A stretch of 64,000 nt of DNA from Stylophora pistillata (taxonomy: Eukaryota): NCBI RefSeq assembly GCF_002571385.2, contig NW_019218411.1, positions 81,750 to 145,749 of the forward strand. Direction: 5' to 3'. The notes beneath the pieces were generated by a model, which worked only from the letters and a program-made list of their open reading frames with translations, did no database searches and was not told where the DNA came from. The translations under genes and the position numbers were made by a program. Below are positions 1-16,412 of this stretch, one piece after another (positions within the stretch are counted from its first letter, which is position 1; every line of letters begins with the position of its first letter).

Positions 1-1020
1 AGCTGTGTCATCGCATCTCCTATAGTTCCAAGAGAGGTTAATATCATTGTACACTTTCTGACGTTCTTCACGTCTTTGACTGGAAACACCCTCCTCATCA
101 TTGCATATCTGAGAATGAACGAAGCGATACTGCTGCTCATTGCCAACATGGCTGCATCTGATCTTCTCTTAGCGCTGGTTCTTTTTCCTAGATGGATCAT
201 AATAGAAGTAACTGAGTCCTCCGAATTCCTCGTTCGCGGTAGTGGAGGCGCTTTTCTTTGTAAGATCTGCACTGTTCTAAGCGACGCATCATTGTCAGTG
301 TCAACCCAAAGTTTAATCTTGATCGCAGTCGAGCGGTTATTGGCACTGATAGCTCCTGTGCTGTATAGGAGGATAACCAATAAAAAAAGAAGAATTCTCG
401 TCATCTGCACTTGGATTGTGGCTATACTACTTCACTTGCCCTATTTCTATGTAATGCAACTGGTTTTAGTCCCTCACAAAGGTACCTTCATCCAAGTTTG
501 TGACCACGACTGGCAAACATTGTTTGAGGACAAAACAGCACATGTTCGTTATAGCATTTTTTTATTTACAACAGTTTTAGTTATACCTATTCTTATAATT
601 TGTGTCCTTTATGCTGTTATTATTATCACCCAACGAAATGACAAAATGGACACCAGTCGAAGTGAAAAGTCCGCAAGACGAAGGGAACAACGCGTCAAGA
701 AATTACAAAGGATGGCTGTAGCCACAGTAACTGCACTCTTTTTATGCTGGCCGCTTTACGTTATGATCGTTTTACACAGAATTGTCTCTCCGGAAACTGT
801 TCCTAAATGTAGTAAATTTTACAAGGTGGTGGATCACATTTCTCACATGATAGCGAGCTGTTATTGTGCAGTTAACCCTTGCCTTTGTTTCATTTTTATA
901 AAAAATTTTTCGCGTCAGCTTAGTTTTTTGTGTAAACGAAAATCTAATCGACAGCCGCTCGTAAAAAAAGTAATCGTACGAATGTCAGAAGGAGAGAATC
1001 TAGTTCTCTCAGCTTTCTGA
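1..1020 (+). CDS. Intronless class A (rhodopsin-family) GPCR, peptide-receptor-like; 5' end lies upstream of the window
   Basis: Frame is open from base 1 (SCVIASPIVPREVNIIVHFLTFFTSLTGNT...). Seven hydrophobic segments with TM1 GN, TM2 NMAASDLL, CKIC at the start of TM3, AVERL (DRY site), TM4 W, TM6 CWP and TM7 NPCLC. TGA at 1018-1020. Confidence 0.9.
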   Translation, partial: SCVIASPIVPREVNIIVHFLTFFTSLTGNTLLIIAYLRMNEAILLLIANMAASDLLLALVLFPRWIIIEVTESSEFLVRGSGGAFLCKICTVLSDASLSVSTQSLILIAVERLLALIAPVLYRRITNKKRRILVICTWIVAILLHLPYFYVMQLVLVPHKGTFIQVCDHDWQTLFEDKTAHVRYSIFLFTTVLVIPILIICVLYAVIIITQRNDKMDTSRSEKSARRREQRVKKLQRMAVATVTALFLCWPLYVMIVLHRIVSPETVPKCSKFYKVVDHISHMIASCYCAVNPCLCFIFIKNFSRQLSFLCKRKSNRQPLVKKVIVRMSEGENLVLSAF

Positions 1021-2271: not shown

Positions 2272-3560
2272 NTTTAATGACTGGGCGAAATCACGAAATC
2301 TCTCCACTCCTACCGACGTCATCTTTCTCGATCTTGCTAAAGCCTTTGACAGTGTCCCTCACGAGCGGCTGCTTTTAAAATTAAAAAGTAATGGCATCGA
2401 CGGTTGTCTGCTTAACTGGCTCAGACATTTTCTGGTTGGTCGCAAACAACGTGTAGTTATCAGGGGATCTTGTTCTGATTGGTCGTATGTAACCTCCGGC
2501 ACTCCACAGGGGACCATCCTTGGGCCTTTATTGTTTTTGCTGTATATTAATGACATAACAGAATGTGTATCGTCCACAATCAAATTATATGCAGACGATA
2601 CGAAGATCTATAGAGAGATAATTGACCCGATCACAGATTGTCAGCGTCTTCAGGAAGATCTTACCAATATTGGCGAATGGGCTTGTAAATGGCAATTACG
2701 TTTTAACGCGGATAAATGTCAATCTATGCGAATTACACATTCACGTGATAAGTCAGTGACCAATTATTTCTTTGGACAGCCCTTGAAAGACGTAGATAAA
2801 TTTAAAGATCTCGGTGTTATAATAACTAAGGACCTCTCATGGAGTAACCACATTGGTATAACTGTGAACAAAGCGAATAAAGTCCTAGGTTCTATTAAAC
2901 GCTCGATAGGCACCGCTAATGCAAATATTTTTTCTATGCTCTACAAATCTCTTGTACGGCCAATTTTGGAATATGTGGTACCTGTCTGGTGTCCTTACCT
3001 CGTCAAGGACATCCATGCTCTTGAGAATGTACAGCGAAGAGCTTCAAGACTTGCTTTAAATCAACGCAAAGGAGACATGTCCTACGAAGACCGATGCAAA
3101 TTGCTAAAATGGCCTACTCTTTCCGACCGTAGAACTTATCTATCTTTAATTGAGTGTTATAAAATTGTTTTTGGTTTTTACCATTTAGATTTTGGAACCT
3201 TTTTTGATTTTGCCACAACTAGATGTACGAGAGCAAATCATCAGTACAAACTTTACGTCAAACCAGCAAGACTTAATTGTTATAAACATTCGTTCTTCAT
3301 TAGGATTGTTAAATTATGGAATGAATTACCAAGAAACATAGTGGAAGCTGATAATCTTCAGCATTTTAAATCTCAGCTTAAATTGTATTTAAATATTTAA
3401 TTATAACTAAGTATTTTATTTTCATTTAGACTTATTTTTTAGGGAGTTTTCACATAGGGATAACCTCTTAACTTCCTTTTCTGGAAGCATATTTTCCATT
3501 TCCTCTTAGTGTATACATAGTCTGCTTCTGGAATAAATAAAGTATGTATGTATGTATGTA
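2272..3560 (+). mobile_element. CR1-clade non-LTR retrotransposon, 3' part (RT ORF 2273-3400 uninterrupted, 3' UTR, microsatellite tail)
   Basis: Open frame with FLDLAKAFDSVPH, GTPQGTILGPLLFLLYIND, YADD, KDLGV, LVRPILEY, LENVQRRA and FFIRIVKLWNELP; ends in AATAAATAAAG(TATG)n at ~3532-3560. Confidence 0.92.
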
Positions 3561-4021
3561 CCCGTTGCAACTAAGATCTTAATTATAATCAGTCTTGAAC
3601 TGAATATATAACGACCACTCTTTTGTCAAACTGCTACTTCCTGTCGACTTTTGAAAGGATCAGTGAGTATATTTCTGATCATAGCCTTTATGGGAGGGGG
3701 GCGGGAGATCGCGTAGATGTTATGGTGACACAGCCAAAATCATCAATTAATCCCCCCCCCTTAAATAATGACTGGACTCTTGTTCTTGCAAAGGCGCCTT
3801 CCTTTGTTGCCCATCCTACTTGTCGGAATGTATTAGATGATTCAAACTAAACACTTTTGATTAAATTACCAAATCCTTTGGCGTTGCAGTTTGGGCTGGA
3901 AAAGAACATTACTGTACATTCTTGATTGTATTACTTTTGCTCATCATTTATTTGATTTTCGAAGATTACACCCCCAATCTTTTTCTGATTTATATTCTCT
4001 GGCGTCATGTTAGATTCATTA

Positions 4022-4783: not shown

Positions 4784-7002
4784 TTAAACATATGTTCCTC
4801 CCTTCTCACTCTCGGACTGCATCACCTTTAGTATTCGTTGGACTAACAGTCGTGCAATGTCGTTATGATCTGAATCCTTTGCTGGTTGGCCTTGCTCCGA
4901 CGCGGCAGCTCCTTCAGATTGGTCATCGTCAGGTGTTACACTAACTGCATCGTCAACTTCCTTTCCACCAGACTTCGGATCTTTAACTCTTTCTTTTCCC
5001 ACTGGTTTCTCCAGAGAGATTGAAATATTTTGGTCTTTTGTAGTACTCAATATGGCCTTACCATCAGGGAAATCGGATGGAAAATCTACAGCAAAATCAC
5101 GTTGTTTAAACTTTAGTGCAACGCAAAGATCGTGGGTGTCTTTGTCTCTACTTGTGCCAGTTATTTCAAACTTTTCCTGGAGAGCGCCATAGATCTTCCC
5201 AAAAAGTTCCATGCCTTCTTTCATTGAGTACCACTGTTCTCCCTTTGTTTCTGCTTGTTGCGATGAAGTTGAAGTCCAGTGTATCTCGCCTTTCACCGGT
5301 TCACTGTAATATTTCTTCTGATCCTTTTTATTGAAAGGATTACGAAGGCGGAAAGCACTGTCCCCCTTCAGTACCTCTGTAGAAATAAATTACGATGATT
5401 TTAGTACAATAAATGAAAGATATATGTGTTATTGACCAAGCGTGAGGTCAAAATGGCTGCGCGGATATTGGCCAGGTTCATTGTTGAAAGAACGAGGTTA
5501 ATATCCAGCCATCTGATACTGATTTAATATTTAATTTCTGTTTCTTGTATATGAATCTTTTGTTGAGCCGAATTTTATTTTAGATGTTTTAGCGTCCACA
5601 CACTACCCGCCGAGACTAGCTCTGCTATTTGTGGGTAGTGCGTCATTATGCTAAGTGTCATGTCATGTCTGATTACAATAAAATACAAAATACATCTCGC
5701 CCGAACAAGCTTGGTCAATAAAGTATTTATACGGCAAAAAAATTTCGCTTTAATATGAATCAAGACTTATTTATTTCGAGACCCGCCTTTGTAAACACCC
5801 ATGAAAAGGTTTATACGCAGCAAAACCTTCATTTGCGTTTAAAATTCTCACCATGATGATTTCATTTCTTTCTTCCCGATATGTACTCGTCTTTCAATCA
5901 TGGCTTTGACAGGGAAGAGAGTGTGTTGCGTGACGAGACCAAACAGCGGCTGTGAAGGAGATAATCTATTATCTTAACACACTACTCAGCAGTGTGTTGT
6001 AACCAATAATTTCTTCGACTGGCGAGTGGGCAGCTAATCTTGCAAAGTTTCCTATAACTCGGCAAGGTCCTAATCATTAAACGTCGTGATAACGACGACG
6101 CGTTTCTGCGTCGATACATGATAAAAATATTAGTGAATACTCTAACGGTGACTGCCTGGAAAAAAAAAATAGATATCTAAGGTTTTTACCGAGTATTCCC
6201 TTCAATGAGGTTTCCTTTTCGATGACACGAATTGGCTTCACGTCCAGTGTTTCATTGTCTAGACCAACCTTCATATAAACAAAGCAGGGCTTTTCTTTAT
6301 CCAGTTGATCCCCTAAAACAGAATATATGGATCATTAACCAAACAAAATGAGACCTAACAGTGAACTTTGCACTACCCGCAGAACAACATATGTGACTAT
6401 ACAGCTATTCCTCTAGGCTCATGGCTAACTCAGTGTGACGGACAAGACATCCTTTATTCTTATATTTCTAACATGAAATTTTTATTTTAAATAGAGGGAA
6501 GGGGTGAGTGAGAATTCTATTTCGTTTGCCCCTAAATCTGGGAAACTGATTCTATCAGCCTCACAACGTTTAGATTTCACGATCGTACGGTCAAAAATTC
6601 ATCTGCTTGTATAGGTTTTAAAAATATTCAGCATGGCGAATTACCCTCCCCAAAAATTGAATCAAAAGCGAAACAAACCGAACGGAAGTGGTACTTGTAA
6701 TTGTCTTTGGCGCTTAATGTACAGCGAACACTGTCAATCCCCCAATAAGAAACTGAATTTCGTTTCTTACCGCCAGATTCTTCTGTGCTCCAAATCCCAA
6801 CTCGTCGAAGAGCATGTTCTTCGAACAACTCTTCTATATCTTCACGTTTCAAGTCCTTAAGACTACCAGTGATATACTGCACGACTGGCTGATTGGAATG
6901 AGTCCACAGACCAAACATGTGTCCTCTTACAGACTTTTTATTCGCGATTTGTCGCTTAATCTGCTTCAGTTCACCCTCGTGGATTGTGACTGTCAGGCTC
7001 AT
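4784..7002 (-). CDS. 3-exon gene (~315 aa): degenerate prokaryote-type JAB/MPN domain fused to a truncated E2/UBC(RWD)-like domain. Exons 7002-6771, 6312-6190, 5376-4784
   Basis: ATG at 7002; GTAAG and GTAAA donors, TAG and CAG acceptors; both introns phase 1, joining three ORF-track fragments into one 948-nt frame. N-terminus LTVTIHEGEL...GHMFGLWTHSNQPVVQYITG...LRRVGIWS...EVLKGDSAFR matches the GGDLFGLWT...PVxxxxxGPG...HIGEWHSH...VLPGxSPFR pattern recalled for this JAB family. C-terminus has QWYS...LQEKF...FAVDFPSDFP. AATAAA on the minus strand at 4615-4620. Confidence 0.8.
5429..5721. repeat. Dispersed non-autonomous repeat with 13-bp inverted ends, in intron 2 of the JAB-E2 gene
   Basis: TTATTGACCAAGC (5429-5441) / GCTTGGTCAATAA (5709-5721). 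Confidence 0.6.
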
Positions 7003-7082
7003 CTTAACTCGTACTGTCAACCGAAAAAAGCAGTAAATAGACCGCAATAACTAAGCAGCGCGGGGAAAGCAGAGCAAAATGA

Positions 7083-8019
7083 TTTTCACTTTTATTATAA
7101 TAAACCTTTTCATGGGCCGTAAACAACAATTCTAAGAAACGGTTACGTCATGTGATCCGCTGAGCCTACCGGTTTTTCCCGGAAATGTTTACATGCTAGG
7201 ATATTCAGATTTTTGTTAAAGCGAATTTACGGAACGAGAGACAAAAGCTTGCATGACAAAGAAAAGTTACAGAAGAACTAGGATGAAAAACCGAAGCAAT
7301 CATTCACCGTGTCTAAATCCTATTTCTTTAGCCTGTCGAATCAAATCTTCGACGGAGCTTTATGAAAATCGCGAAAATTCGATCGGCTATTGCGAGGTTA
7401 AAAAATAAGACTGCGTCTAATTTATAGGAAAAGTGTGAGCTATTTCGGTTTCCAAATACAGTCACGACTGCAAGAAAAAAAAAAAAACTTTGATTTATGT
7501 AGAAAATAAAACCTAAAAACTTCGCTTTCTTTCGGATCAATCAGTTGATCCCGAAGTGTGTAGGATTATTCCATTATCTCGAAAGAAATTGTTATGGCGA
7601 ATCATGTTTTTGCCGATTTAAATTTTGCTGCACTCCTGTCTTTGTAACCCGCGTAAACGAAATGTTTTGGATTCTAGGAAAAAGGCCTGAAGAAGTACGC
7701 ATTTAACATGGCAGTCGTAATTACGAGCGACAAACACTCATCAATTCTGCCATACAACCAAATTTTTCGATGTGTCCTGTTGAAATTAAGGAGCAATAAA
7801 AATAACATAGATCCCATGATTTTTTTAAGCATGCAACATTTCTCTCGGCGCTATGAAGACATGACGTTTAAATTTTTGAATGGAAGAAAGGAATTAATTA
7901 ATAAATATAGTTTGCATACATGAAAAAAAACAAAGACAGACAAAATTATGTAACCTTATATGGCAATGCAGTCTTGCTTAAAGTGGGCATGACGTTATGA
8001 CTTTTCGTGGAAAATGAAA
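7083..8019. promoter_or_regulatory. Divergent promoter region with STAT (GAS) and IRF-like motifs at both ends
   Basis: Minus-strand AAAAGTGAAAA 7083-7093; TTCTAAGAA 7130-7138; TTACGTCA 7143-7150; TTTCCCGGAAA 7175-7185; TTCTAGGAA 7672-7680; TTCGTGGAA 8004-8012 overlapping GAAAATGAAA 8010-8019. Confidence 0.6.
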
Positions 8020-8200
8020 TAAAATTGCTGGTAGCATTCTATTCCCTCAAATTGATTCTTTGCGCATGTGCACGTCATCAATATTTCAAAACAATGTATC
8101 AATGTTAACAACTATAACTCTCCAGTCATTTAAACTGAAGGACCATTGCTGTGCACACCCTATCTCGAAAAAACAGCTAAAAAACAAACAGCTTTAAGTG

Positions 8201-8650
8201 ATGCCCTGGTCACAGGCCCAGAAACAGAGGCTCGGCTACGAGAAAACGGTTTTGGAGAACTATTTTCGCGACAGAGTGACATGGATTAGTCCCAGAGATC
8301 AAACGAAAGTGGAAGTTCGAGCCACATGCACCAACAATAGACAGTACACGTTGAGGATTTATCTGCCCTCTGATTTCCCCAATTCCTGTCCCAAAATGGT
8401 TGTCAAGGCATCGTCTCGACTGAGGGCGCGTAACGGAGATCTTTTAGAGCAGTATCCAGGTGACAACCATATCGGACAAACCGTAGAAGGCTACACAGGT
8501 ATCTGCCATTTTAGGCCAAATCGGTGGAGGAGCGAAAACACTTTGTACCAGGTGACCATGAAAGGTCTGATATGGCTGGAAGCTTATGAAGCGCATCTTC
8601 GCACAGGCCAACCCTTGAGCCAATTTTTGGTCACGATGCCAGATCGTTAA
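8201..8650 (+). CDS. Non-canonical E2/UBC-fold protein, copy 1 (149 aa, intronless)
   Basis: N-terminal helix QRLGYEK, YTLRIYLPSDFPNSCPKM (E2 beta3-PxxY/FPxxPP), NH...GICHF with putative catalytic Cys102 (8504-8506), W, TLYQV and C-terminal KGLIWLEAYEAHLRTG; conserved in two neighbouring paralogs. Confidence 0.85.
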   Translation: MPWSQAQKQRLGYEKTVLENYFRDRVTWISPRDQTKVEVRATCTNNRQYTLRIYLPSDFPNSCPKMVVKASSRLRARNGDLLEQYPGDNHIGQTVEGYTGICHFRPNRWRSENTLYQVTMKGLIWLEAYEAHLRTGQPLSQFLVTMPDR

Positions 8651-10380
8651 AAAACCAATTGTGGTTGGTGTTAGACAGAACGATTTGAGAGTTGTAAAAC
8701 CACACTGATTATAGAATTTATAGAGAAGCATAGCTTGCATTCATGCGATCGAGATTACTGAATTACAATTTTCCGATAGCGGGGTGTAGTATGAATGTAC
8801 GAGTGAGAATCCTGGTTATGGTTGTAAATAAATTACATAAATAAGGAGTTCCAGCGATGTCATTTGTTTTTCGTTCGATTATGAAAACAGTTAGGTATAC
8901 AAGGCTCTCTCTCAGTCCCAGGTAAATGAGCAGAAGAGCGATACAACCTCGTTCCCAGGGTCTCTCATCCTCCCGCCCCGAGGTCGAAGAGCGATGATAT
9001 TCAATTTAGAATTTACCAATGTTAGATGCTTATCTTAAAATCAGCATCCACTATACGAAACAACAAAAGCGACAACCAAATTGGCTTATAATTCAAAATT
9101 GTGTTTCTAGCTACGGTTTTTCTGTAAATTCATCCAGAAGTATTGAATAGCAAAATTCTTGGAAACCAGTGTAACTGATGGATGCAATACAATATTTCTG
9201 AGATAGAGTTTTTCTAAAAGTCTAATGCTGAACAGTGTTTATGTAAGTGCATTTGTCTGGTGTTGTGGTAGATCTTATTGGGAAATACCAATAACCACAT
9301 GGTGTAACTCCTTTCTTCTATGTGGCAGAAGCGATAAGAAAGCGTAACTAAATGGTTATGGCGTTCATTAGCAGCAAAAAATTCGGGAAGTTTGCACACA
9401 CGCATCTGTATTCCGCTTCGAAGAAATGATAAACTTATCTCCTCGGGTTACTTTGATTTTTCAGTCTTTTCTCAAAGAGTTATAATTTCTTAGGCGTAAA
9501 ATTCTCTAGGCTTCGAAGTCGCAAGTAAATAAAGGCAATTTGCAGCGAAAATTGGGCAACCAAGCTTTCCTTACACTCCACTGATGTAACGAGTTTTCAA
9601 GGTAAACTGAAATCTTGTTCGATTCTAAGAAAAACTCAAAAATTGTAAAATTAAATTTTGAGTCAAACTACCGGTATTTCCGAGAAACCTGTTTTTTTCA
9701 AGGGCATACGATATTTCTTTCACATTTTCAAGGATCTTTAATTTCCTTAAACTATTTCATACTTCCCTCTTTCTTTTAGTTACTGGCTAGTTTTACAAGA
9801 GTTCTGGGTCCAGTCCAGTATATACCATCTGCCCCAGCTCATTGCAAAGTCCTCATTTTCTCGCACTCCGACGTAGCTCTTGGGCATGAAAAACTTGTAG
9901 GTGAGACAAGGGTCTTGACCGCATAACAATTGATAGGTTAGAAACATTTTAGCTTAACTTCCGGAAGCCCGCTGTTGTTATTATCCTTTGTTTATCATAC
10001 CTTTGAGTTATGAGGCGCATTGTACATGTTCTCTTTAATCACCGTTCGATACAATGTAATTCTAAAATATGATAGATATTACGTTAGGAAAAAAAGTTGA
10101 AAAATTTTCTTTTCATATTCCTTATCCTTTCTTCTTTTAATATGGAGATGTTGCTCTTGTAGAAAGGCTCGACGAAGGGTCGGAATCAGCACGCGCAACT
10201 CAAGAACTGTTCATGGTCCAAATCAAGGCAGAATTCGTGCCCATATAATTTGTGCTTTAAAATTTTAAAATAGTCAGCTTTATTTTCCATTGAAATCAGA
10301 TGCAGAAAGAAAATAAATTACCTGCTGCAAAGAGTACCGGCCAGTCATGCATAAAAGGCTGTTGTGTTAAAAATAAAGTT

Positions 10381-10523
10381 TTCCACGAAAAACGCCTATC
10401 GGTTATTTACTTTTCATCTTCCTGAATTTCAAGGAACTAAGCAATGCTATCTGCGCATGCTCCAGTTTTCCGGGAAATCTGAAATGTGATGAGACAGTAG
10501 AAACAAAGCGGTTCGAATATAAA
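10381..10523 (+). promoter_or_regulatory. Promoter of E2-like copy 2: three GAS-type sites, ISRE-like site, TATA
   Basis: TTCCACGAA 10381-10389; TTCAAGGAA 10428-10436; TTCCGGGAA 10468-10476 overlapping GAAATCTGAAA 10474-10484; TATAAA 10518-10523. Confidence 0.6.
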
Positions 10524-10617
10524 GTTTCGCAACCGTTCACTGGCTCTGTATTCAGCGAGTGTTCCACGTTTGAAACTTCATGCAGGTAAACCGAAGTCGC
10601 CTTTTTTTTTCTTTAAA

Positions 10618-11061
10618 ATGCCATGGTCCGCAACTCAACGACAAAGGCTTGCATTTGAGAAAAATATTCTCGAGAAGTACTTCGGTACCAGAGTTTCATG
10701 GATTGATCCAACTCGCAATACAAGGGTTGAAGTAAGAGTGACAACCACCAGTGATAAACAGTATACACTCAGAGTGTATATTCCAACAGATTTTCCGAAT
10801 TCAGTTCCGCAGATGATTGTCAGTAACCCTTCGTCTTGTCTGAGAATGAAAAACGGTTCATCCATGAGCGGTAGGGATGGGCAAAACCACACTTTGAGCA
10901 GCATAGATGGCTGCACCCAGATCTGCCATTTTAACTCGTCCTTGTGGAAAGATAACAACACGTTGTACCAAGTGGTCATGAAAGGGCTTATATGGCTGGA
11001 AGGGTACGAAGCACATCATCGCACTGGGCAACCTCTGAGTAAATACTTGCAAGAGATGTAA
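10618..11061 (+). CDS. Non-canonical E2/UBC-fold protein, copy 2 (147 aa, intronless)
   Basis: ATG in AAAATG context aligns with the MPWS start of the paralogs; YTLRVYIPTDFPNSVP; NHTLSSIDGCTQICHF (Cys103 at 10924-10926); KGLIWLEGYEAH. Confidence 0.85.
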   Translation: MPWSATQRQRLAFEKNILEKYFGTRVSWIDPTRNTRVEVRVTTTSDKQYTLRVYIPTDFPNSVPQMIVSNPSSCLRMKNGSSMSGRDGQNHTLSSIDGCTQICHFNSSLWKDNNTLYQVVMKGLIWLEGYEAHHRTGQPLSKYLQEM

Positions 11062-11431
11062 ACAAATTGGCTGAGGACAGGAAAGGAATTGTTCATCAAG
11101 ACACACACGTATGTGTCAGTAACATTAATTCATACATTTATTTGATAAGATATTCAAAAAAAGCTAATTTAGCATTTCAGTCAAAATATATACTTCATCC
11201 AGTCCTAAATCTAAGTCATAATCAATAACCCAAACCGAAGGATCAAGGTTTAGGCACAAGTAAGAAGTCACATTGCTAAAACTTGACCTATTATACCTTT
11301 GAAACTCAGATTATTACTCGGGCTTTCCGAAGGAAAAGCCCGAAGTATAAATTCGGCTGTGTTTTTATTTAATTTTTGCGTTCAGTCACAAAACGTAGTT
11401 CCACTACAGCGCATGCGTACAATGTAAGCGC

Positions 11432-12700
11432 ATGCGTACAAGGAAGCCTAAAGCGCATGGTTTAAAGGAAGAAGGCAAATGGCTGACTTCCTGGACAATT
11501 CCTTGCTTGATGTATCCAAAAGAAATTCGATGGCTATTATGCCCAATGTATATACAAAGTCACACACCGCGGTCTGCACTAAAAGTTGTGGAGGGATTTG
11601 GGAACGGGTCGTTTCGCGAACTTTACGACAGATCAATTTACGAGGAATCCTTTATGAGTGAACGTTTTATCGAGAAATATCACGCGAAATCTGCTATATC
11701 AAATGAGTTATGTCATATTATGTTTACATGTAAACACAACCGTGTATTTAGACGTGATCGAGAACCCAGTAGAATACCAGAAGCTACTCTGAAACGTCTC
11801 AGAAGAAAGGGCGGAAAACTGAAGGAATTTGTTTATGTGCCGGTATTCGTCCAAGCATATGTACCGAAGTCCTCTTGGCTACGTCGTTATGTGAAGGTTA
11901 GAAGAGTTACAAAGAATGTTTGTAAGCTTGATACGAAGAGGGTAAGATTAAATAAAGGTACAAAACATGATAAGAAGTATTTGTTGAATTGTTCAGTGAG
12001 GGTGTATCAGAGGACAATGAAATTGAAGTATAGAGCAAGGTGGTATTTATCAATGTTTTCTTGTAATAGACCCTTGTGTCTTTACAAGAGTCAGACACAC
12101 GCGTCAAACTATTGAAAATTTCAACTGAGTTCAGATGTTGAGAAAAATCCTGGTCCCACTCCAATGTACATTGACCCTAGCAAATTAATAATGGCACCAT
12201 ATAGCCAAGCTAAGGAGTTGGTATTTGGACAAAATTCAGGACAACAATGTGTTGCATTGCGAGTTTATGCTCTTTGATTTACAATAACAAACAAGGAATC
12301 AATTCTGCTAATGCTCTCTTGTCAATGATGAGTATTTGCAATCAGTTGTATTCAAGTTTCTCTCAGTTAACCAAACAATAATTTTAATAATGCAGACAGA
12401 ATTACCCACACTTTTAAATGTGTGCAAGAATGAAGAACCTTTCAATCACTTTTATCCGAAAATTTCAACAATTTTGTCTTGACAACATGATGTACTGCAG
12501 TTGCTATCTATTGTAAAGGTAATGTGGGCTTAAAAATATTCGATTCTTGTGCAAAGGATATTTATTGTAGAAGCCATCCTCAAGGTACACGTGTGCTGCT
12601 TGAAGTATCATCACTGAATAGCTTAGTACATTATTTTCAGAGTATACATAACAATGACATATTTGAGTTGAAAGAGGTTAAAATTAACAAGAGTTCAAAA
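11432..12700 (+). pseudogene. Decayed Helentron ORF: basic N-terminal region, 2A-like peptide, herpes tegument-type (Herpes_teg_N/C76) deubiquitinase relic
   Basis: After the in-frame TGA at 12113-12115 the same frame reads KFQLSSDVEKNPGP (DVEKNPGP 12134-12157) then APYSQAKELVFGQNSGQQCVA. Frameshifted continuation reads SLCSLIY and KIFDSCAKD...HPQGTRVLLEV (FDSH degraded to FDSC at 12539-12550). Confidence 0.7.
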
Positions 12701-13223
12701 TAGTACCGTTTTTTAGAGTCATGCCTGTGAAACCAGAAAGTTCAATGTGAGTGGTGCTGTGCCTGTCTATTCACTCTGCTACTCCGTAATAAAATCATGT
12801 AGTTATTGGAATTCAAACACCTTATCTAATGTTATTCAGTATGGCAAAAGATTATATGAAAAGTCAATCCTTGAAAATCTTGTAAGAAATAATGGTGAAT
12901 GCACAGGGTTTTTGATGTGGTTTTCAGTTTTTTGTATGACGTATTTTTAAACCCACAAAAAGGTCAAAATATGTGTCTTAGTATTTAATGAAGGTCAAAT
13001 GCCTCTTATTGAATATACTAAAACTGTAAATAGCACTACTTCTCTTGTTGGGGCCATCAAAAATATTCAATATTCAGAGATTTTTCTGTTAAAAACAATA
13101 TGAACTACTGAACATTAATATTGCTTCAATATACTGATTTCTGACAACTCCCTTTGGGTGATCATTTAATTTGGCAACAAACTATGACTCGGTACCAATA
13201 ATAGATGAAAAATTCCCTTCTCC

Positions 13224-13425
13224 TTCCAGTTAAAGGCAAATACATAACCTACTCAAGGTTTGTAAGAGCCTTGAAAGTCCTTGAAGGTGCTTAAATTTTA
13301 AAATAAAGAATTCAATGAATTGAATTCAATGAATTCCAGTTAAAGGCAACCTACTCAAGGTTTGTAAGAGCCTTGAAAGTCCTTGAAGGTGCTTAAATTT
13401 TAAAATAAAGAATTCAATGAATTGA
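13224..13425. repeat. ~100-bp direct tandem duplication inside the Helentron
   Basis: TTCCAGTTAAAGGCAA...CCTACTCAAGGTTTGTAAGAGCCTTGAAAGTCCTTGAAGG...GAATTCAATGAATTGAA at 13224 and 13334. Confidence 0.85.
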
Positions 13426-14895
13426 AAGTACTTGAATTTGAGGACTAGGGCTTGATTTTTGCAATGCTTTTTCTAAGCAATTTTCAAGTTGAAAATAACA
13501 GAACTTTCATGGAAAAGCTGAGAAATAATATAAAATGATTTTAAAATTGCTTATGCAAACCTTTCCAAAAGTGGTCCTTCAATTCTCTAAAACTTGGCCT
13601 TCAAAGTCGTTGAAAAGTCCTTGAATTTGAACCCTTGGTATCTGTAGTAACCTACTCCTATATAGTAATCTATTATTTTGATTGATATCTAGTACCATAA
13701 CAACATTCATTACACTCCAGCAAACAAAAATAAACAGAAGTTGACTTATTCATGACCGGCAAAGACGGAATTGCGTGACGACAGTAATATGGCAGTCCCC
13801 TAAAAATAACTTCAGATGTGCGATATTGAAAGCCCGAGTTCACGCGGCTATGCGTCTAGTTAATTAAGAATAAGCATTTTTCTATGTTTCACTTTCATGT
13901 TTCATTCTATTCCTACCAACTCTTTGAGAGTTGGGCGAAGGATCTTATTTCAAGTGTTAAAGCAATTTCGTGAGGGACTCGATCACATCCAATGACCTCC
14001 GAAAATACATTTGTACGATTTCGAAGGAGTCTTTTAGGTTTGCTCGAAAGAAAGAATTATTTGCATTGGAAGTAGAATCTTGCGTGTGAAACTCTTATCA
14101 CTCGTACCGCGCACTGATTTGTTTCCATTTCAGTCGGTTCATTTTGGAAACAGTGTTTGAATAGCTGCGGTAGCTCAGACTAATACCAGTTAAGCTTAAG
14201 AAATTGGTCGGAAGGGGTCAGCTGGCGTGACTCTGACGTTGCTGATCCGTAAGAGTGGGAATCTTGTAAGAGTCGCAGGTAAGTAGCTTTTTAGAGAAAA
14301 AAAAAAAAAGGGATCCGTAAAGTGGCTTCATCTTCCAGCCCGTCCAATAAATTTGTGGTGCTTGCATAAGGTTCACAACGGACCATTCCGGAACCTTTCG
14401 GTTATTTCTATATACAGTAGACGAATTAGATCTTTCGCTCTCCAACTTTGAGTACTATTTCTCGAGGCAAAGCTTGTTAAAGACCAAAAAACATTGAGGA
14501 AGGCTATTTTTATGCCAATGATTCCCGACATTTCCTGCAAAATGATTGGAAGATTTAAGGGATTTAATCCGTTTATTGTTATTATGAACATTTTATTATG
14601 AACTGTAGTCAAAGATAAATGTAAATAATCTCAGTCAGCACTTGCTTAAATATTTAATACAATACATTCTAGGCGAAGCTTGAGCGTGAGCCCACATGGG
14701 GATGTATATAGGGATGCAAGGAAAGTGGAGAGAAGGGAGGAGAAGGGGGGTCCATAGGCATGCTGCCGCTAGAATATTTCGATTTTCATTAGACGAAGAT
14801 GACAACATAGTAGCCTCCAAAAATTAATTTTTTTTATCAAAAACTAAAACAACTATCCCCAGTGAGTTAAATTGAAAAATTACATAAGAAGTTGA

Positions 14896-15045
14896 TTAGC
14901 CCTTTAACTCCAATGAGTGACCAAGACAGAATTTCTCCTTACAATATCATTACAATATCAGGCAGAAAAGATATGACAACAAAGAAAAATATCACTCACG
15001 GGATTACCAGTTGATCCAATAACTAATTCTCCGAACTAATGAATT
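14896..15045 (+). repeat. MITE-like fragment (TTAA-CCCT start) at the end of duplication unit 1; second copy at ~17654-17800
   Basis: CCCTTTAACTCCARTGAGTGACCAAGACAGA...ATATCAATACAATATC...AAATTCTCCGAACTAA present in both units. Confidence 0.6.
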
Positions 15046-15334
15046 AAATTATACAATATTTCTTCATCTTTTCAACGATTTTTCCTCGGACGACTTTCAT
15101 ATTTCCTTCATTATTGGGTATTTTCATAACAGTTCTGGGTCCACTCCGGTACGGTCCTCTCCGCCCTGGCTCACTGCAAAGTTCTCATTCCGCCGAGCAT
15201 GGGCATGAATAAGTTTTAAATGAGACAAGGAACTTGAACCATGACAGCGAAACAATGGAAAGGTCAGTAACATGCTCCCCGAACTTGCGAAAGCTAATTG
15301 TTCACTATTCGATGCAGTAGTATTGAACAGTACT

Positions 15335-15475
15335 GGCCGAATTCTGTACAGGCCTGAATTTTTTCAGTTCTGATTTTCACTACTGCTTAAATAGTGCTCT
15401 TTATTGCGAGGATCGTGTACAAATACGTTTCTATAACCGCAGTTCAGATATATGAATTTCATATATTAGTACAGT
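15335..15475 (+). repeat. SINE-like dispersed repeat fragment present only in duplication unit 2
   Basis: GTACAGGCCTGAATTTTT...CACTACTGCTTAA...CCGCAGTTCAGATATATGAATTTCATATATT; missing from the aligned region of unit 1 (~10050-10075). Confidence 0.5.
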
Positions 15476-15735
15476 AGATATCATGTTAGAGTAAAAAAAG
15501 TTGTAACTCTTTCTTTTCATTTTTCCTTTTTCCCTTTCCTGAGTAATCTAATTGCGATTTTGCCGTTATAGCACAGCTCCGTCGACGAAGAGAAAATCAG
15601 CGCGTGCAATCTAAGAGTTAAATTTCACTTTTTTCAATTCAATTTTTCGTTAGATCAGAAAGAAAGTGAATTATATGAGCCGCAAAGAGCAGCAGCCAGT
15701 CAGGTATAAAAGACTGTTGCAATATAAACAAACTT

Positions 15736-15838
15736 TTCCACGAAAACGGCCACGCATCGTTTACCTCAAGTTCTTCCTGAATTTCTAAGAGCTGGGCAAT
15801 GCTATTTACGCATGCTCCAGTTTCCGGGAAAACTGAAA
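15736..15838 (+). promoter_or_regulatory. Promoter of E2-like copy 3: GAS sites plus overlapping IRF element
   Basis: TTCCACGAA 15736-15744; TTCCGGGAA 15822-15830 overlapping GAAAACTGAAA 15828-15838. Confidence 0.6.
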
Positions 15839-15968: not shown

Positions 15969-16412
15969 ATGCCGTGGTCAGCAGCTCAGCAGAAAAGACT
16001 TGGATTTGAGAAAAATATTCTCGAGAAGTACTTCGGTAACAGAGTTTCGTGGATTAATCCAACTGGTGCTACGAAGGTCGAAGTGAGAGTGACGACCACC
16101 AGTGATAAACAGTATACACTTAGAGTGTATCTTCCCGGAGATTTCCCGAATTCAGTCCCGAACATGATCGTCAGTAACCCTTCGTCCTGTCTGAGAAAGA
16201 GAGACGGTTCTTCGATGAGCGGTGGGAGCGGAAGTGATCATACATTGAGTAGCATAGATGGTTGTACTCAGATCTGCCATTTCAAAGCAGACTTATGGCG
16301 AGATAATAACACACTGTACCAAGTTGTCATGAAAGGGCTGATATGGCTGGAAGGTTACGAAGCACATCTTCGAACCGGGCAACCTCTGAGTAAATTCTTG
16401 CAAGAGATGTAA
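15969..16412 (+). CDS. Non-canonical E2/UBC-fold protein, copy 3 (147 aa, intronless)
   Basis: 25 differences from copy 2 over 147 aa (hand count); YLPGDFPNSVP; DHTLSSIDGCTQICHF (Cys103 at 16275-16277); KGLIWLEGYEAH. Confidence 0.85.
   Translation: MPWSAAQQKRLGFEKNILEKYFGNRVSWINPTGATKVEVRVTTTSDKQYTLRVYLPGDFPNSVPNMIVSNPSSCLRKRDGSSMSGGSGSDHTLSSIDGCTQICHFKADLWRDNNTLYQVVMKGLIWLEGYEAHLRTGQPLSKFLQEM

What the first reader, a model, noticed from the sequence alone, without database searches (positions are those of the whole stretch)
7083..15838. All four cluster genes have proximal STAT (GAS) plus IRF (ISRE-like) motifs, an interferon-stimulated-gene-like promoter grammar
Seen within ~85-240 bp of each ATG. 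JAB gene: TTTCCCGGAAA, TTCTAAGAA, AAAAGTGAAAA. E2-1: TTCGTGGAA overlapping GAAAATGAAA. E2-2: TTCCACGAA, TTCAAGGAA, and TTCCGGGAA overlapping GAAATCTGAAA. E2-3: TTCCACGAA, and TTCCGGGAA overlapping GAAAACTGAAA. The overlapping GAS/IRF design recurs in E2-1, whose promoter is otherwise barely alignable. I noticed the optimal TTCC(C/G)GGAA only at these promoters; a rough base-composition estimate gives well under one per 64 kb, though two of the three hits are paralogous. Established: TTCN3GAA binds STATs, GAAANNGAAA/AANNGAAA binds IRFs, and cnidarians have both factors but no interferons. Inference: the cluster is co-induced by antiviral signalling, analogous to vertebrate ISG15/UBE2L6/USP18.
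Basis: partly seen in the sequence, partly recalled or inferred. Interest (0 to 1): 0.8.

Follow-up and report, generated by a model that had tools for sequence, protein, structure and literature searches.

The report
STAT-type sites at coral E2-like promoters
A small coral-specific family of ubiquitin-conjugating-enzyme-like genes, and the MPN/JAB-like gene beside three of them, all keep a STAT-type DNA palindrome (TTCNNNGAA) in their promoters across several coral species, which gives testable candidate STAT targets in an animal without interferon; whether they respond to infection was not tested.

Summary
TTCC(C/G)GGAA occurs 3 times in 64 kb, all at these promoters. Expectation is 0.30, and the genome holds 1,857 sites in 398 Mb.

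The signal holds beyond the window.
- All six E2-like paralogs in the genome have TTCN3GAA 144-211 bp upstream of the ATG, and so do most copies in other coral assemblies.
- In an unbiased scan of 6,240 gapped patterns over 16 mutually unalignable promoters, TTC-N3-GAA ranked first: 13/16 against 6.5% of background tiles.
- It occurs in 4/60 control promoters of the same genome. Spacings N2 and N4, kB and ETS motifs are not enriched.
- The ISRE-type GAAANNGAAA is moderately enriched (9/16 against 6/60).

Caveats:
- RNA data put the E2-2 site at the transcript 5' end, inside a conserved core-promoter block.
- The E2-1 composite is missing in the Pocillopora ortholog.
- The JAB "IRF" motif lies at the 5'UTR/TATA zone.
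- All three genes laid with reads are transcribed in samples of unknown state.
- The "JAB" protein has an MPN fold but no JAMM residues.

STAT binding and antiviral induction remain inference. Other notes of this scan report similar STAT-type promoters elsewhere in this genome.

The parts
6771..7002 (-). Coding part of exon 1 of the MPN/JAB-like gene (LOC111343318, 315-aa model P0097). Transcript contigs extend 5' to 7058 and 7116.
   Evidence: The splice donor at 6771/6770 is confirmed by RNA contigs that join to 6311.
7176..7184 (.). Optimal STAT-type palindrome TTCCCGGAA in the JAB-like promoter, about 60-120 bp upstream of the transcript 5' ends.
   Evidence: It lies in a 36-bp block identical in the Pocillopora-type ortholog L023.
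7130..7138 (.). Second STAT-type palindrome TTCTAAGAA in the JAB-like promoter, 14-22 bp upstream of the longest transcript contig end (7116).
   Evidence: Kept in L023 at the same distance from the ATG.
7143..7150 (.). CRE/ATF-like TTACGTCA between the two palindromes, conserved in the ortholog.
   Evidence: TGACGT is not enriched across the family.
7084..7094 (-). It abuts a TATA-like run and lies at or inside the 5'UTR.
   Evidence: Zero depth from 7135 upward; contig ends at 7058 and 7116.
8004..8019 (+). E2-1 composite: TTCGTGGAA overlapping the canonical ISRE core GAAAATGAAA, about 105-140 bp upstream of the transcript contig starts (8122, 8144).
   Evidence: A 22-bp gap replaces it in the Pocillopora-type ortholog.
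8201..8650 (+). E2-1, an intronless 149-aa UBC-fold gene.
10381..10389 (.). Distal STAT-type palindrome of E2-2 (TTCCACGAA), about 95 bp upstream of the transcript 5' end. It is kept 85-87 bp from the proximal site in E2-3 and in the Pocillopora-type copies, with changes in the spacer only.
10428..10436 (.). TTCAAGGAA in E2-2. Not kept in E2-3 or the Pocillopora-type copies, so probably incidental.
10453..10484 (+). Conserved core-promoter block of E2-2: GCGCATGC (10453-10460), Inr-like CCAGTTT, optimal palindrome TTCCGGGAA (10468-10476) and GAAATCTGAAA (10474-10484). The RNA 5' end is at about 10478.
10618..11061 (+). E2-2, an intronless 147-aa UBC-fold gene.
15736..15744 (.). Distal STAT-type palindrome of E2-3 (TTCCACGAA).
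15808..15838 (+). Conserved core-promoter block of E2-3: ACGCATGC, CCAGTT, TTCCGGGAA (15822-15830) and GAAAACTGAAA (15828-15838).
   Evidence: The promoter is 78% identical to that of E2-2 and has no other copy in the genome.
15969..16412 (+). E2-3, an intronless 147-aa UBC-fold gene, 83% identical to E2-2.

Best explanation
The TTCN3GAA palindromes are real, selectively maintained cis-regulatory elements. They are shared by a scleractinian-specific family of small UBC-fold (E2-like) genes and, independently, by the neighbouring MPN/JAB-like gene. The most likely reader is a dimer of the coral STAT, because both half-sites and the exact 3-nt spacing are what is conserved, and the optimal TTCC(C/G)GGAA form occurs three times. 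In about half of the promoters a tandem-GAAA (IRF-type) site lies within 60 bp. The cluster is therefore probably co-regulated by one STAT (plus IRF) input. In the E2-2/E2-3 clade the proximal site is part of a roughly 32-bp conserved core-promoter block (CGCATG, CCA, TTTCCnnGAAA) at the transcription start, and a second conserved palindrome lies about 86 bp upstream. Shown here: motif presence, enrichment, spacing specificity, cross-species and cross-paralog retention, transcription and approximate 5' ends, and protein folds. Inferred: that STAT and IRF proteins bind the sites, and that the input is immune or antiviral.
For: All six S. pistillata paralogs carry TTCN3GAA at -144 to -211 from the ATG. 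So do 17 of 19 copies in four other coral assemblies, at about -110 to -240, and a further species at -147. Outside short blocks the promoters align no better than shuffled sequence. TTC-N3-GAA ranks first of 6,240 gapped patterns: 13/16 against 6.5% of tiles, p=1.8e-13. In 60 Ras-superfamily upstream regions of the same genome the rate is 4/60, Fisher p=7e-9. N2 and N4 spacings, kB and CCGGAA are not enriched; GAAANNGAAA is found in 9/16 against 6/60; a palindrome within 60 bp of GAAANNGAAA is found in 7/16 against 0/60, p=5e-6. In the site logo T-TTC and GAA-A are invariant while the spacer varies. The block is conserved between unalignable flanks. Both JAB-like promoter sites are kept at the same positions in the Pocillopora-type ortholog. 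The genome holds five IRF DNA-binding-domain genes and collinear exon-level STAT_bind hits. The genes are transcribed on the expected strands. The half-site orientation TTCC...GGAA is the STAT type, opposite to Rel/NFAT kB-type sites (established knowledge).
Against: No binding or induction data exist for these sites. The E2-2 optimal site lies at -11 to -3 of the observed RNA 5' end, or just downstream of an Inr-like CCAGTTT. That position is unusual for an activator and fits a core-promoter or repressor role. The overlapping GAAA repeats of E2-2 and E2-3 have 3-nt spacing and, in E2-2, would be transcribed. The E2-1 composite is absent in the sister-genus ortholog. The genes are expressed in samples whose state is unknown, so they may be constitutive. 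STAT or single-IRF knock-down had no measurable effect on 2'3'-cGAMP-induced genes in Nematostella (PMC8713801). Pfam STAT domains gave only weak exon-level hits. The control promoters come from one gene superfamily, and their start sites were inferred from the ATG only.
Confidence: 0.5

Rival explanations
1. The conserved TTTCnnnGAAA is a core-promoter or start-site-positioning element read by some other factor, working with the adjacent CGCATGC (NRF1-like palindrome) and an Inr-like CCA(G/A)TTT. It drives constitutive or cell-type-specific expression with no STAT and no immune input.
For: The E2-2 RNA 5' end is at about 10478, directly after the palindrome, with zero depth upstream in all runs. 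A JAB-like transcript contig ends 14 bp downstream of TTCTAAGAA. The CGCATG-CCA-TTTCC block has fixed spacing. GCGCATG is enriched, 6/16 against 1/60. The genes are expressed in four RNA runs of unknown condition.
Against: Paralogs C53, C112 and C332, E2-1 and the JAB-like gene keep the palindrome without the CGCATG block. E2-1's site is about 110-140 bp upstream of its transcript start. A second palindrome is conserved about 95 bp upstream in the E2-2 clade. I know of no described core-promoter element with this palindrome (my own knowledge). Both half-sites being invariant with strict 3-nt spacing points to a dimeric factor.
Confidence: 0.3
2. The start-site-overlapping palindrome is a repressor site, for a STAT-site competitor or unphosphorylated STAT. 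It keeps the genes low until a signal displaces the repressor.
For: The site overlaps the E2-2/E2-3 start site. In vertebrates repressors compete for STAT-like sites (established knowledge for BCL6; I do not know of a cnidarian equivalent).
Against: The genes are readily detected in RNA runs. No candidate repressor was identified. Most other family members were not mapped for their start sites.
Confidence: 0.1
3. The motif pattern is chance plus shared ancestry of duplicated promoters, or it is carried by a dispersed repeat.
For: TTCN3GAA is frequent, about 0.6 per kb. E2-2 and E2-3 are recent duplicates with 78-80% identical promoters. Many family promoters share one ancestral block.
Against: The pattern ranks first of 6,240 and is absent from controls. 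The flanks are saturated while the block is kept. The unrelated JAB-like gene has two sites, conserved in its ortholog. The promoter is not repeated elsewhere in the genome. The genome-wide density of the optimal site equals that of its reversed control.
Confidence: 0.03

Closest known systems
GAS (gamma-activated sequence) elements of vertebrate STAT target genes such as the IRF1 promoter, and Drosophila STAT92E sites (TTCNNNGAA, optimum TTCCCGGAA)
   Same: The same palindrome, the same strict 3-nt spacing and the same optimal core. Two sites per promoter in several genes. Promoter-proximal location.
   Different: No binding or induction has been shown. In E2-2 and E2-3 the optimal site overlaps the transcription start. 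The animal has no known interferon. Whether cnidarians have a JAK is unclear to me (my own knowledge, not tested here).
ISRE / IRF-E elements (GAAANNGAAA) of interferon-stimulated genes
   Same: The canonical core occurs near the palindrome in 7 of 16 independent family promoters (0 of 60 controls), including E2-1, C53 and C112.
   Different: In E2-2 and E2-3 the spacing is 3 nt. In the JAB-like gene the motif is degenerate and sits in the 5'UTR/TATA zone. The E2-1 copy is not conserved in Pocillopora.
Vertebrate ISG15 / UBE2L6 / USP18 module (co-induced ubiquitin-like conjugation genes)
   Same: UBC-fold genes next to a gene with a deubiquitinase-type (MPN) fold, all sharing STAT/IRF-type promoter motifs.
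   Different: No ubiquitin-like modifier or E1 was identified here. The MPN-like protein lacks JAMM catalytic residues, and USP18 is in any case a USP-type cysteine protease. The E2-like proteins fall below Pfam UQ_con thresholds. Induction is untested.
NRF1-type palindrome (GCGCATGCGC) in TATA-less promoters
   Same: (GC)GCATGC lies at a fixed 12-nt distance upstream of the palindrome in the E2-2-like clade, about 20-26 bp upstream of the RNA 5' end.
   Different: Only a partial match to the NRF1 consensus. It is absent from the other paralogs and from the JAB-like gene.

Membership tests
STAT-responsive GAS element | Palindrome TTC-N3-GAA with both half-sites required | tested here: met
   T-TTC and GAA-A are invariant and the spacer is variable across about 14 effective independent sites. 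N2 and N4 spacings are not enriched.
STAT-responsive GAS element | Non-random, conserved occurrence in promoters of the gene set | tested here: met
   13/16 against 6.5% of tiles, ranked first of 6,240 patterns. 4/60 control promoters. Kept in orthologs and paralogs.
STAT-responsive GAS element | A STAT protein is encoded by the genome | tested here: inconclusive
   STAT_bind and STAT_alpha gave nothing at E<=0.001. Two collinear weak exon hits (model positions 1-19 and 84-123) lie at C116:131141-133022, and again at a duplicate locus on C122.
STAT-responsive GAS element | STAT binds the site and the gene responds to STAT activation | not testable with these tools
   This needs EMSA, DAP-seq or ChIP plus perturbation experiments.
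ISRE / IRF-E | Tandem GAAA with 2-nt spacing (GAAANNGAAA) | tested here: inconclusive
   Enriched across the family, 9/16 against 6/60, and 7/16 against 0/60 within 60 bp of a palindrome. In the window it is met only by E2-1. E2-2 and E2-3 have 3-nt spacing and the JAB-like gene has AAAANNGAAA.
ISRE / IRF-E | IRF proteins are encoded by the genome | tested here: met
   Five IRF DNA-binding-domain exons above the Pfam cut-off.
Interferon-stimulated-gene-like (immune-inducible) promoter | Transcription induced by viral or nucleic-acid stimuli | not tested
   The genes are expressed in four RNA runs of unknown condition. No paper in the library names these genes.
UBC / E2 fold (the 'E2' genes) | UBC fold with a conserved cysteine in the active-site region | tested here: met
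   AlphaFold2 model with pLDDT 92. All top PDB matches are E2 enzymes, TM about 0.55. Cys103 is nearly invariant and His104 invariant. Pfam UQ_con and RWD hits are only below threshold.
JAMM/MPN+ deubiquitinase (the 'JAB' gene) | MPN fold | tested here: met
   The N-terminal 130 residues, pLDDT about 80, match BRCC36, Rpn8/Rpn11 and CSN6. There is no Pfam hit on the protein itself.
JAMM/MPN+ deubiquitinase (the 'JAB' gene) | E...HxHx7Sx2D metal-binding motif | tested here: not met
   No conserved His, Asp or Glu among the invariant columns. The position of HxH reads GIWSTEESG or GNWST in the homologs.

The most novel reading that the evidence does not exclude
These promoters are part of a genuine STAT(+IRF) regulon in stony corals. 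It would switch on a coral-specific ubiquitin-like conjugation module (UBC-fold genes plus an MPN-like partner) in response to infection. That would be an interferon-independent counterpart of the vertebrate ISG programme, with a cis-regulatory code older than interferon itself.
Probability: 0.3. Interest if true: 0.75.

Novelty: new member of a known kind. Interest (0 to 1): 0.55.

Why it matters
Cnidarians have STAT and IRF genes and induce many ISG homologues, but they have no interferon. In Nematostella, knock-down of STAT or of single IRFs has not shown a role in that response (PMC8713801). I found no paper in the library that links TTCNNNGAA to a cnidarian promoter. A small set of compact, intronless genes would therefore be a practical reagent. 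Their promoters keep a textbook STAT palindrome through tens of copies and several genera, while everything around it has decayed. Useful experiments include reporter constructs, EMSA or DAP-seq probes, and marker genes for challenge experiments. The result also shows that the motif is not a general feature of promoters in this genome.

Tried and rejected
- Chance: rejected.
- Paralogy alone: rejected, because the flanks align at the level of shuffled sequence while the block persists, and the unrelated JAB-like gene has its own conserved sites.
- Dispersed repeat or transposon-borne site: rejected. The E2-2 promoter matches only itself and E2-3.
- Heat-shock element (TTCN2GAA), STAT6-type N4, kB (GGGRNNYYCC), ETS CCGGAA and CRE TGACGT: none enriched.
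- Global MAFFT alignment of the six promoters was uninformative, and one input coordinate was wrong; I redid it by anchoring on the site.
- Regulon survey from genome-wide TTTCCSGGAAA sites. Of five sampled loci, one site lies about 610 bp upstream of an IRF gene, two lie inside coding repeats, and the others have no obvious gene. The result is inconclusive.
- SOCS-gene positive control.
- STAT detection by Pfam gave only weak exon hits.
- NCBI-sourced homologs (Oculina, Acropora) and P0109 had no contig on record.
- The longer JAB-like homologs came only as transcript contigs without promoters.
- Gene identifiers are not mentioned in any held paper.
Exon 1 of the JAB-like gene was searched by reference, and the 315-aa product used for folding is the database's own model returned by that search.
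- No complex prediction was run.


Full report
**What is in the window**

The window is G000:C626:81750-145749 of Stylophora pistillata. The species follows from the accession names of the encoded proteins. The region 4.7-16.5 kb holds four genes.
- E2-1 (8201-8650), E2-2 (10618-11061) and E2-3 (15969-16412) are three intronless plus-strand genes for 147-149-aa proteins.
- A three-exon minus-strand gene starts at 7002. Its product is the annotated 315-aa protein LOC111343318.

The small proteins score only below threshold against RWD and UQ_con. An AlphaFold2 model built on 30 homologs (pLDDT 92) has a UBC fold, and every top PDB match is an E2 enzyme. Cys103 is nearly invariant and His104 is invariant.

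The "JAB" protein has no Pfam hit. Its N-terminal 130 residues are predicted, at moderate confidence, to adopt an MPN fold matching BRCC36, Rpn8/Rpn11 and CSN6. The JAMM metal-binding motif is not there: GIWSTEESG stands where HxH would be, and no His, Asp or Glu column is conserved. So the "E2" label holds at fold level, while "JAB" means an MPN-like, probably non-catalytic, domain.

Exon 1 was searched by reference, and the full-length model is the one the database returned.

**The observation**

- TTCCSGGAA occurs three times in 64 kb, at 7176, 10468 and 15822, against 0.30 expected. None of 100 shuffles reached 3.
- Genome-wide there are 1,857 such sites in 397.6 Mb. That is again 0.30 per 64 kb, and no more than the reversed control pattern at 1,899.
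- The extended TTTCCSGGAAA has 411 sites.
- Three sites in 8.7 kb has Poisson P of about 1e-5. With the E2-2/E2-3 duplicates counted once, P is 8e-4.

**Beyond the window**

The genome has six paralogs of the E2-like gene, three here and one each on C53, C112 and C332. Every one carries TTCN3GAA between -144 and -211 from its ATG. Five of the six have the extended form TTTCnnnGAAA; C332 has TTTCCTGGAAT.

The family has at least 96 homologs. The two that carry a source name are from stony corals, Oculina patagonica and Acropora cervicornis.

In contigs from four other coral assemblies, 17 of 19 full-length copies have the palindrome at about -110 to -240. Most sit in tandem arrays. Another species has it at -147.

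Pairwise global identity of the 300-bp promoters equals that of shuffled sequence (0.60), except within five recent duplicate groups. This leaves about 16 mutually unalignable promoters.

**Statistical tests on those 16 promoters**
- I counted all 6,240 patterns of the form 3 letters, 2-4 Ns, 3 letters in the -250 to -100 window. TTC-N3-GAA came first: 13/16 against 6.5% of background tiles, p=1.8e-13. The next ranks are shifted versions of the same site.
- As a promoter control I took 60 upstream regions of Ras-superfamily genes from the same genome. Only 4/60 have the motif in that window, at a density of 0.54 per kb, which is about the genomic background. Fisher p is 7e-9.
- The enrichment is specific to the 3-nt spacing. 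TTCN2GAA (4/16 against 6/60), TTCN4GAA (3/16 against 7/60), kB, CCGGAA and TGACGT are not enriched.
- The E2-2 promoter is not a dispersed repeat.

**Anatomy of the site**

In the weighted logo, T-TTC and GAA-A are invariant. The first spacer letter is mostly C or T, the last is A or G, and the middle one is free. This is the STAT-type arrangement of half-sites (TTCC...GGAA). It is the reverse of Rel/NFAT kB-type sites.

In the E2-2-like clade the site sits in a conserved footprint of about 32 bp, consensus cATct.CGCATG..CCA..TTTCCgaGAAA, between flanks that cannot be aligned. That clade includes Stylophora E2-2 and E2-3, the Pocillopora-type copies and most copies in the other assemblies.

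GCGCATG is itself enriched, 6/16 against 1/60. The same clade keeps a second palindrome 85-87 bp upstream, read as TTCCACGAA, TTCCATGAA or TTCCGTGAA. The changes fall only in the spacer.

Paralogs C53, C112 and C332, E2-1 and the JAB-like gene keep the palindrome without the CGCATG block.

**The IRF part**

The canonical GAAANNGAAA is moderately enriched, 9/16 against 6/60, p=2e-4. It lies within 60 bp of a palindrome in 7/16 promoters against 0/60 controls, p=5e-6.

Within this window the picture is weaker.
- Only E2-1 has the canonical spacing.
- E2-2 and E2-3 have GAAA-N3-GAAA. Only that of E2-3 can be read as the looser IRF-E form G(A)AAA-SY-GAAA.
- The JAB motif is AAAANNGAAA next to a TATA-like run.

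**Orthologous intergenic region**

A TARA Pacific scaffold, L023, carries the JAB-like and E2-1 orthologs head to head. E2-1's 90%-identity cluster includes a Pocillopora verrucosa protein.

The JAB-like promoter is about 85-90% identical overall, and both palindromes are kept at the same distances. The optimal one lies in a 36-bp identical block. In the E2-1 promoter the GAS/IRF composite is replaced by a 22-bp gap, and no other TTCN3GAA occurs within 400 bp. That site is therefore lineage-specific.

**Transcription**

Two raw stranded RNA runs and two poly(A) contig sets were laid on 6300-11300. The JAB-like gene, E2-1 and E2-2 are transcribed on the expected strands. E2-3 lies outside the stretch. 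The sample conditions are not known to me.
- JAB-like gene: exon 1 runs from 6770/6771 to 7058 or 7116, and depth is zero from 7135 upward. TTCCCGGAA is therefore about 60-120 bp upstream of the start and TTCTAAGAA about 14-70 bp upstream. AAAAGTGAAAA lies at or inside the 5'UTR.
- E2-1: contigs start at 8122 and 8144, so its composite is about 105-140 bp upstream.
- E2-2: depth is zero in 10308-10474 in three of the four runs; in X10 a low-depth contig (10042-10376) gives 2.4. One contig starts at 10478 directly after adapter sequence. The optimal palindrome (10468-10476) therefore abuts the RNA 5' end, just downstream of an Inr-like CCAGTTT. In that case the GAAATCTGAAA is transcribed.

Contig ends are imprecise and only one reads call was allowed, so these are estimates.

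**Trans-factors and literature**
- Five IRF DNA-binding-domain exons are present.
- STAT Pfam models gave nothing significant exon by exon. Two collinear weak STAT_bind hits at one locus, repeated on a second contig, fit a multi-exon STAT gene.
- In S. pistillata, two immune cell types express NFAT and IRF1/2, and one of them also expresses IRF3/9 (PMC8162421).
- In Nematostella, poly(I:C)-activated cells up-regulate homologs of IRF2 and STAT5A (PMC13319465).
- Knock-down of the single STAT or of each IRF did not measurably change the 2'3'-cGAMP response (PMC8713801).
- No held paper connects TTCNNNGAA with a cnidarian or names these genes.
- Other notes of this scan report STAT-type sites at further S. 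pistillata promoters, and two follow-ups found them conserved across corals. I treat these as leads only.

**Interpretation**

That the palindrome is a functional, selected promoter element is about 90% likely. I rate STAT as its reader at about 50%. The main rival, at about 30%, is a different factor acting at the core promoter, because of the start-site position in E2-2/E2-3 and the fixed CGCATG-CCA-TTTCC block.

The ISG15/UBE2L6/USP18 analogy holds only loosely. UBC-fold genes lie beside an MPN-fold gene with shared promoter motifs. No modifier or E1 was identified, and the MPN-like protein lacks catalytic residues.

**Limits**
- Control promoters come from one superfamily, with starts inferred from the ATG.
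- Species names of the ENA assemblies are unknown.
- Start sites rest on one reads call.

Noticed in passing
window 8805-8979: A short high-copy element in the E2-1 3' region. RNA depth is 10-20 times that of the flanks on both strands, many reads have loose ends at 8943-8945 and 8978-8980, and there are 'opposite strands' joints. It looks like a dispersed inverted-repeat element transcribed from many loci.
   Followed up: no
L014 (G000:C13:1076500-1082500), site at 3319-3327: An optimal TTTCCCGGAAA, flanked by GAAGCAGAAA, lies about 610 bp upstream of the ATG of one of the five IRF genes (DNA-binding-domain exon at C13:1078874-1079185, minus strand). It may be a STAT-to-IRF link, but no start site is known.
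   Followed up: partly
L111 (G000:C3:491000-500999), sites at 3632, 5512, 7197: Three TTCCSGGAA sites lie within 3.6 kb in what looks like a tandem repeat array, judging from the repeating open frames. Each is preceded by ACGCATGCCACT, which resembles the CGCATGC...TTTCC arrangement of the E2-2 core block but with wider spacing.
   Followed up: no
L015 (G000:C13:764000-772500), sites at 3842 and 4639: Two TTTCCCGGAAA sites lie inside repeated open reading frames that encode ...KYFPGNT.... They are coding sequence of a repeated gene or element, which shows that many genomic matches are not regulatory.
   Followed up: no
window 4787-5378 (minus strand), last exon of LOC111343318: The C-terminal half of the MPN-like protein contains DFAVDFPSDFPDGKA in a predicted helix plus four-strand unit. 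This recalls the Y-x-P-x-DFPNS-x-P strand-loop of the neighbouring E2-like proteins, so it may be a second UBC/RWD-like domain.
   Followed up: no
window 11400-12115: Just downstream of E2-2 lies a pair of GCGCATGCGTACAA repeats (11410-11445), followed by a 227-aa open frame (11432-12115) with no Pfam match. It may be a remnant of another promoter or gene between E2-2 and E2-3.
   Followed up: no
window 8950-9760: One poly(A) contig set continues from the E2-1 transcript region to about 9760 on the same strand at lower depth. This is either a long alternative 3'UTR or a separate transcript.
   Followed up: no
window 76-1020 and 2531-3400: A 314-aa open frame with a seven-transmembrane-receptor look lies at 76-1020. 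A 289-aa reverse-transcriptase-like open frame, probably from a retroelement, lies at 2531-3400, beside an N-masked stretch at about 2110-2270.
   Followed up: no
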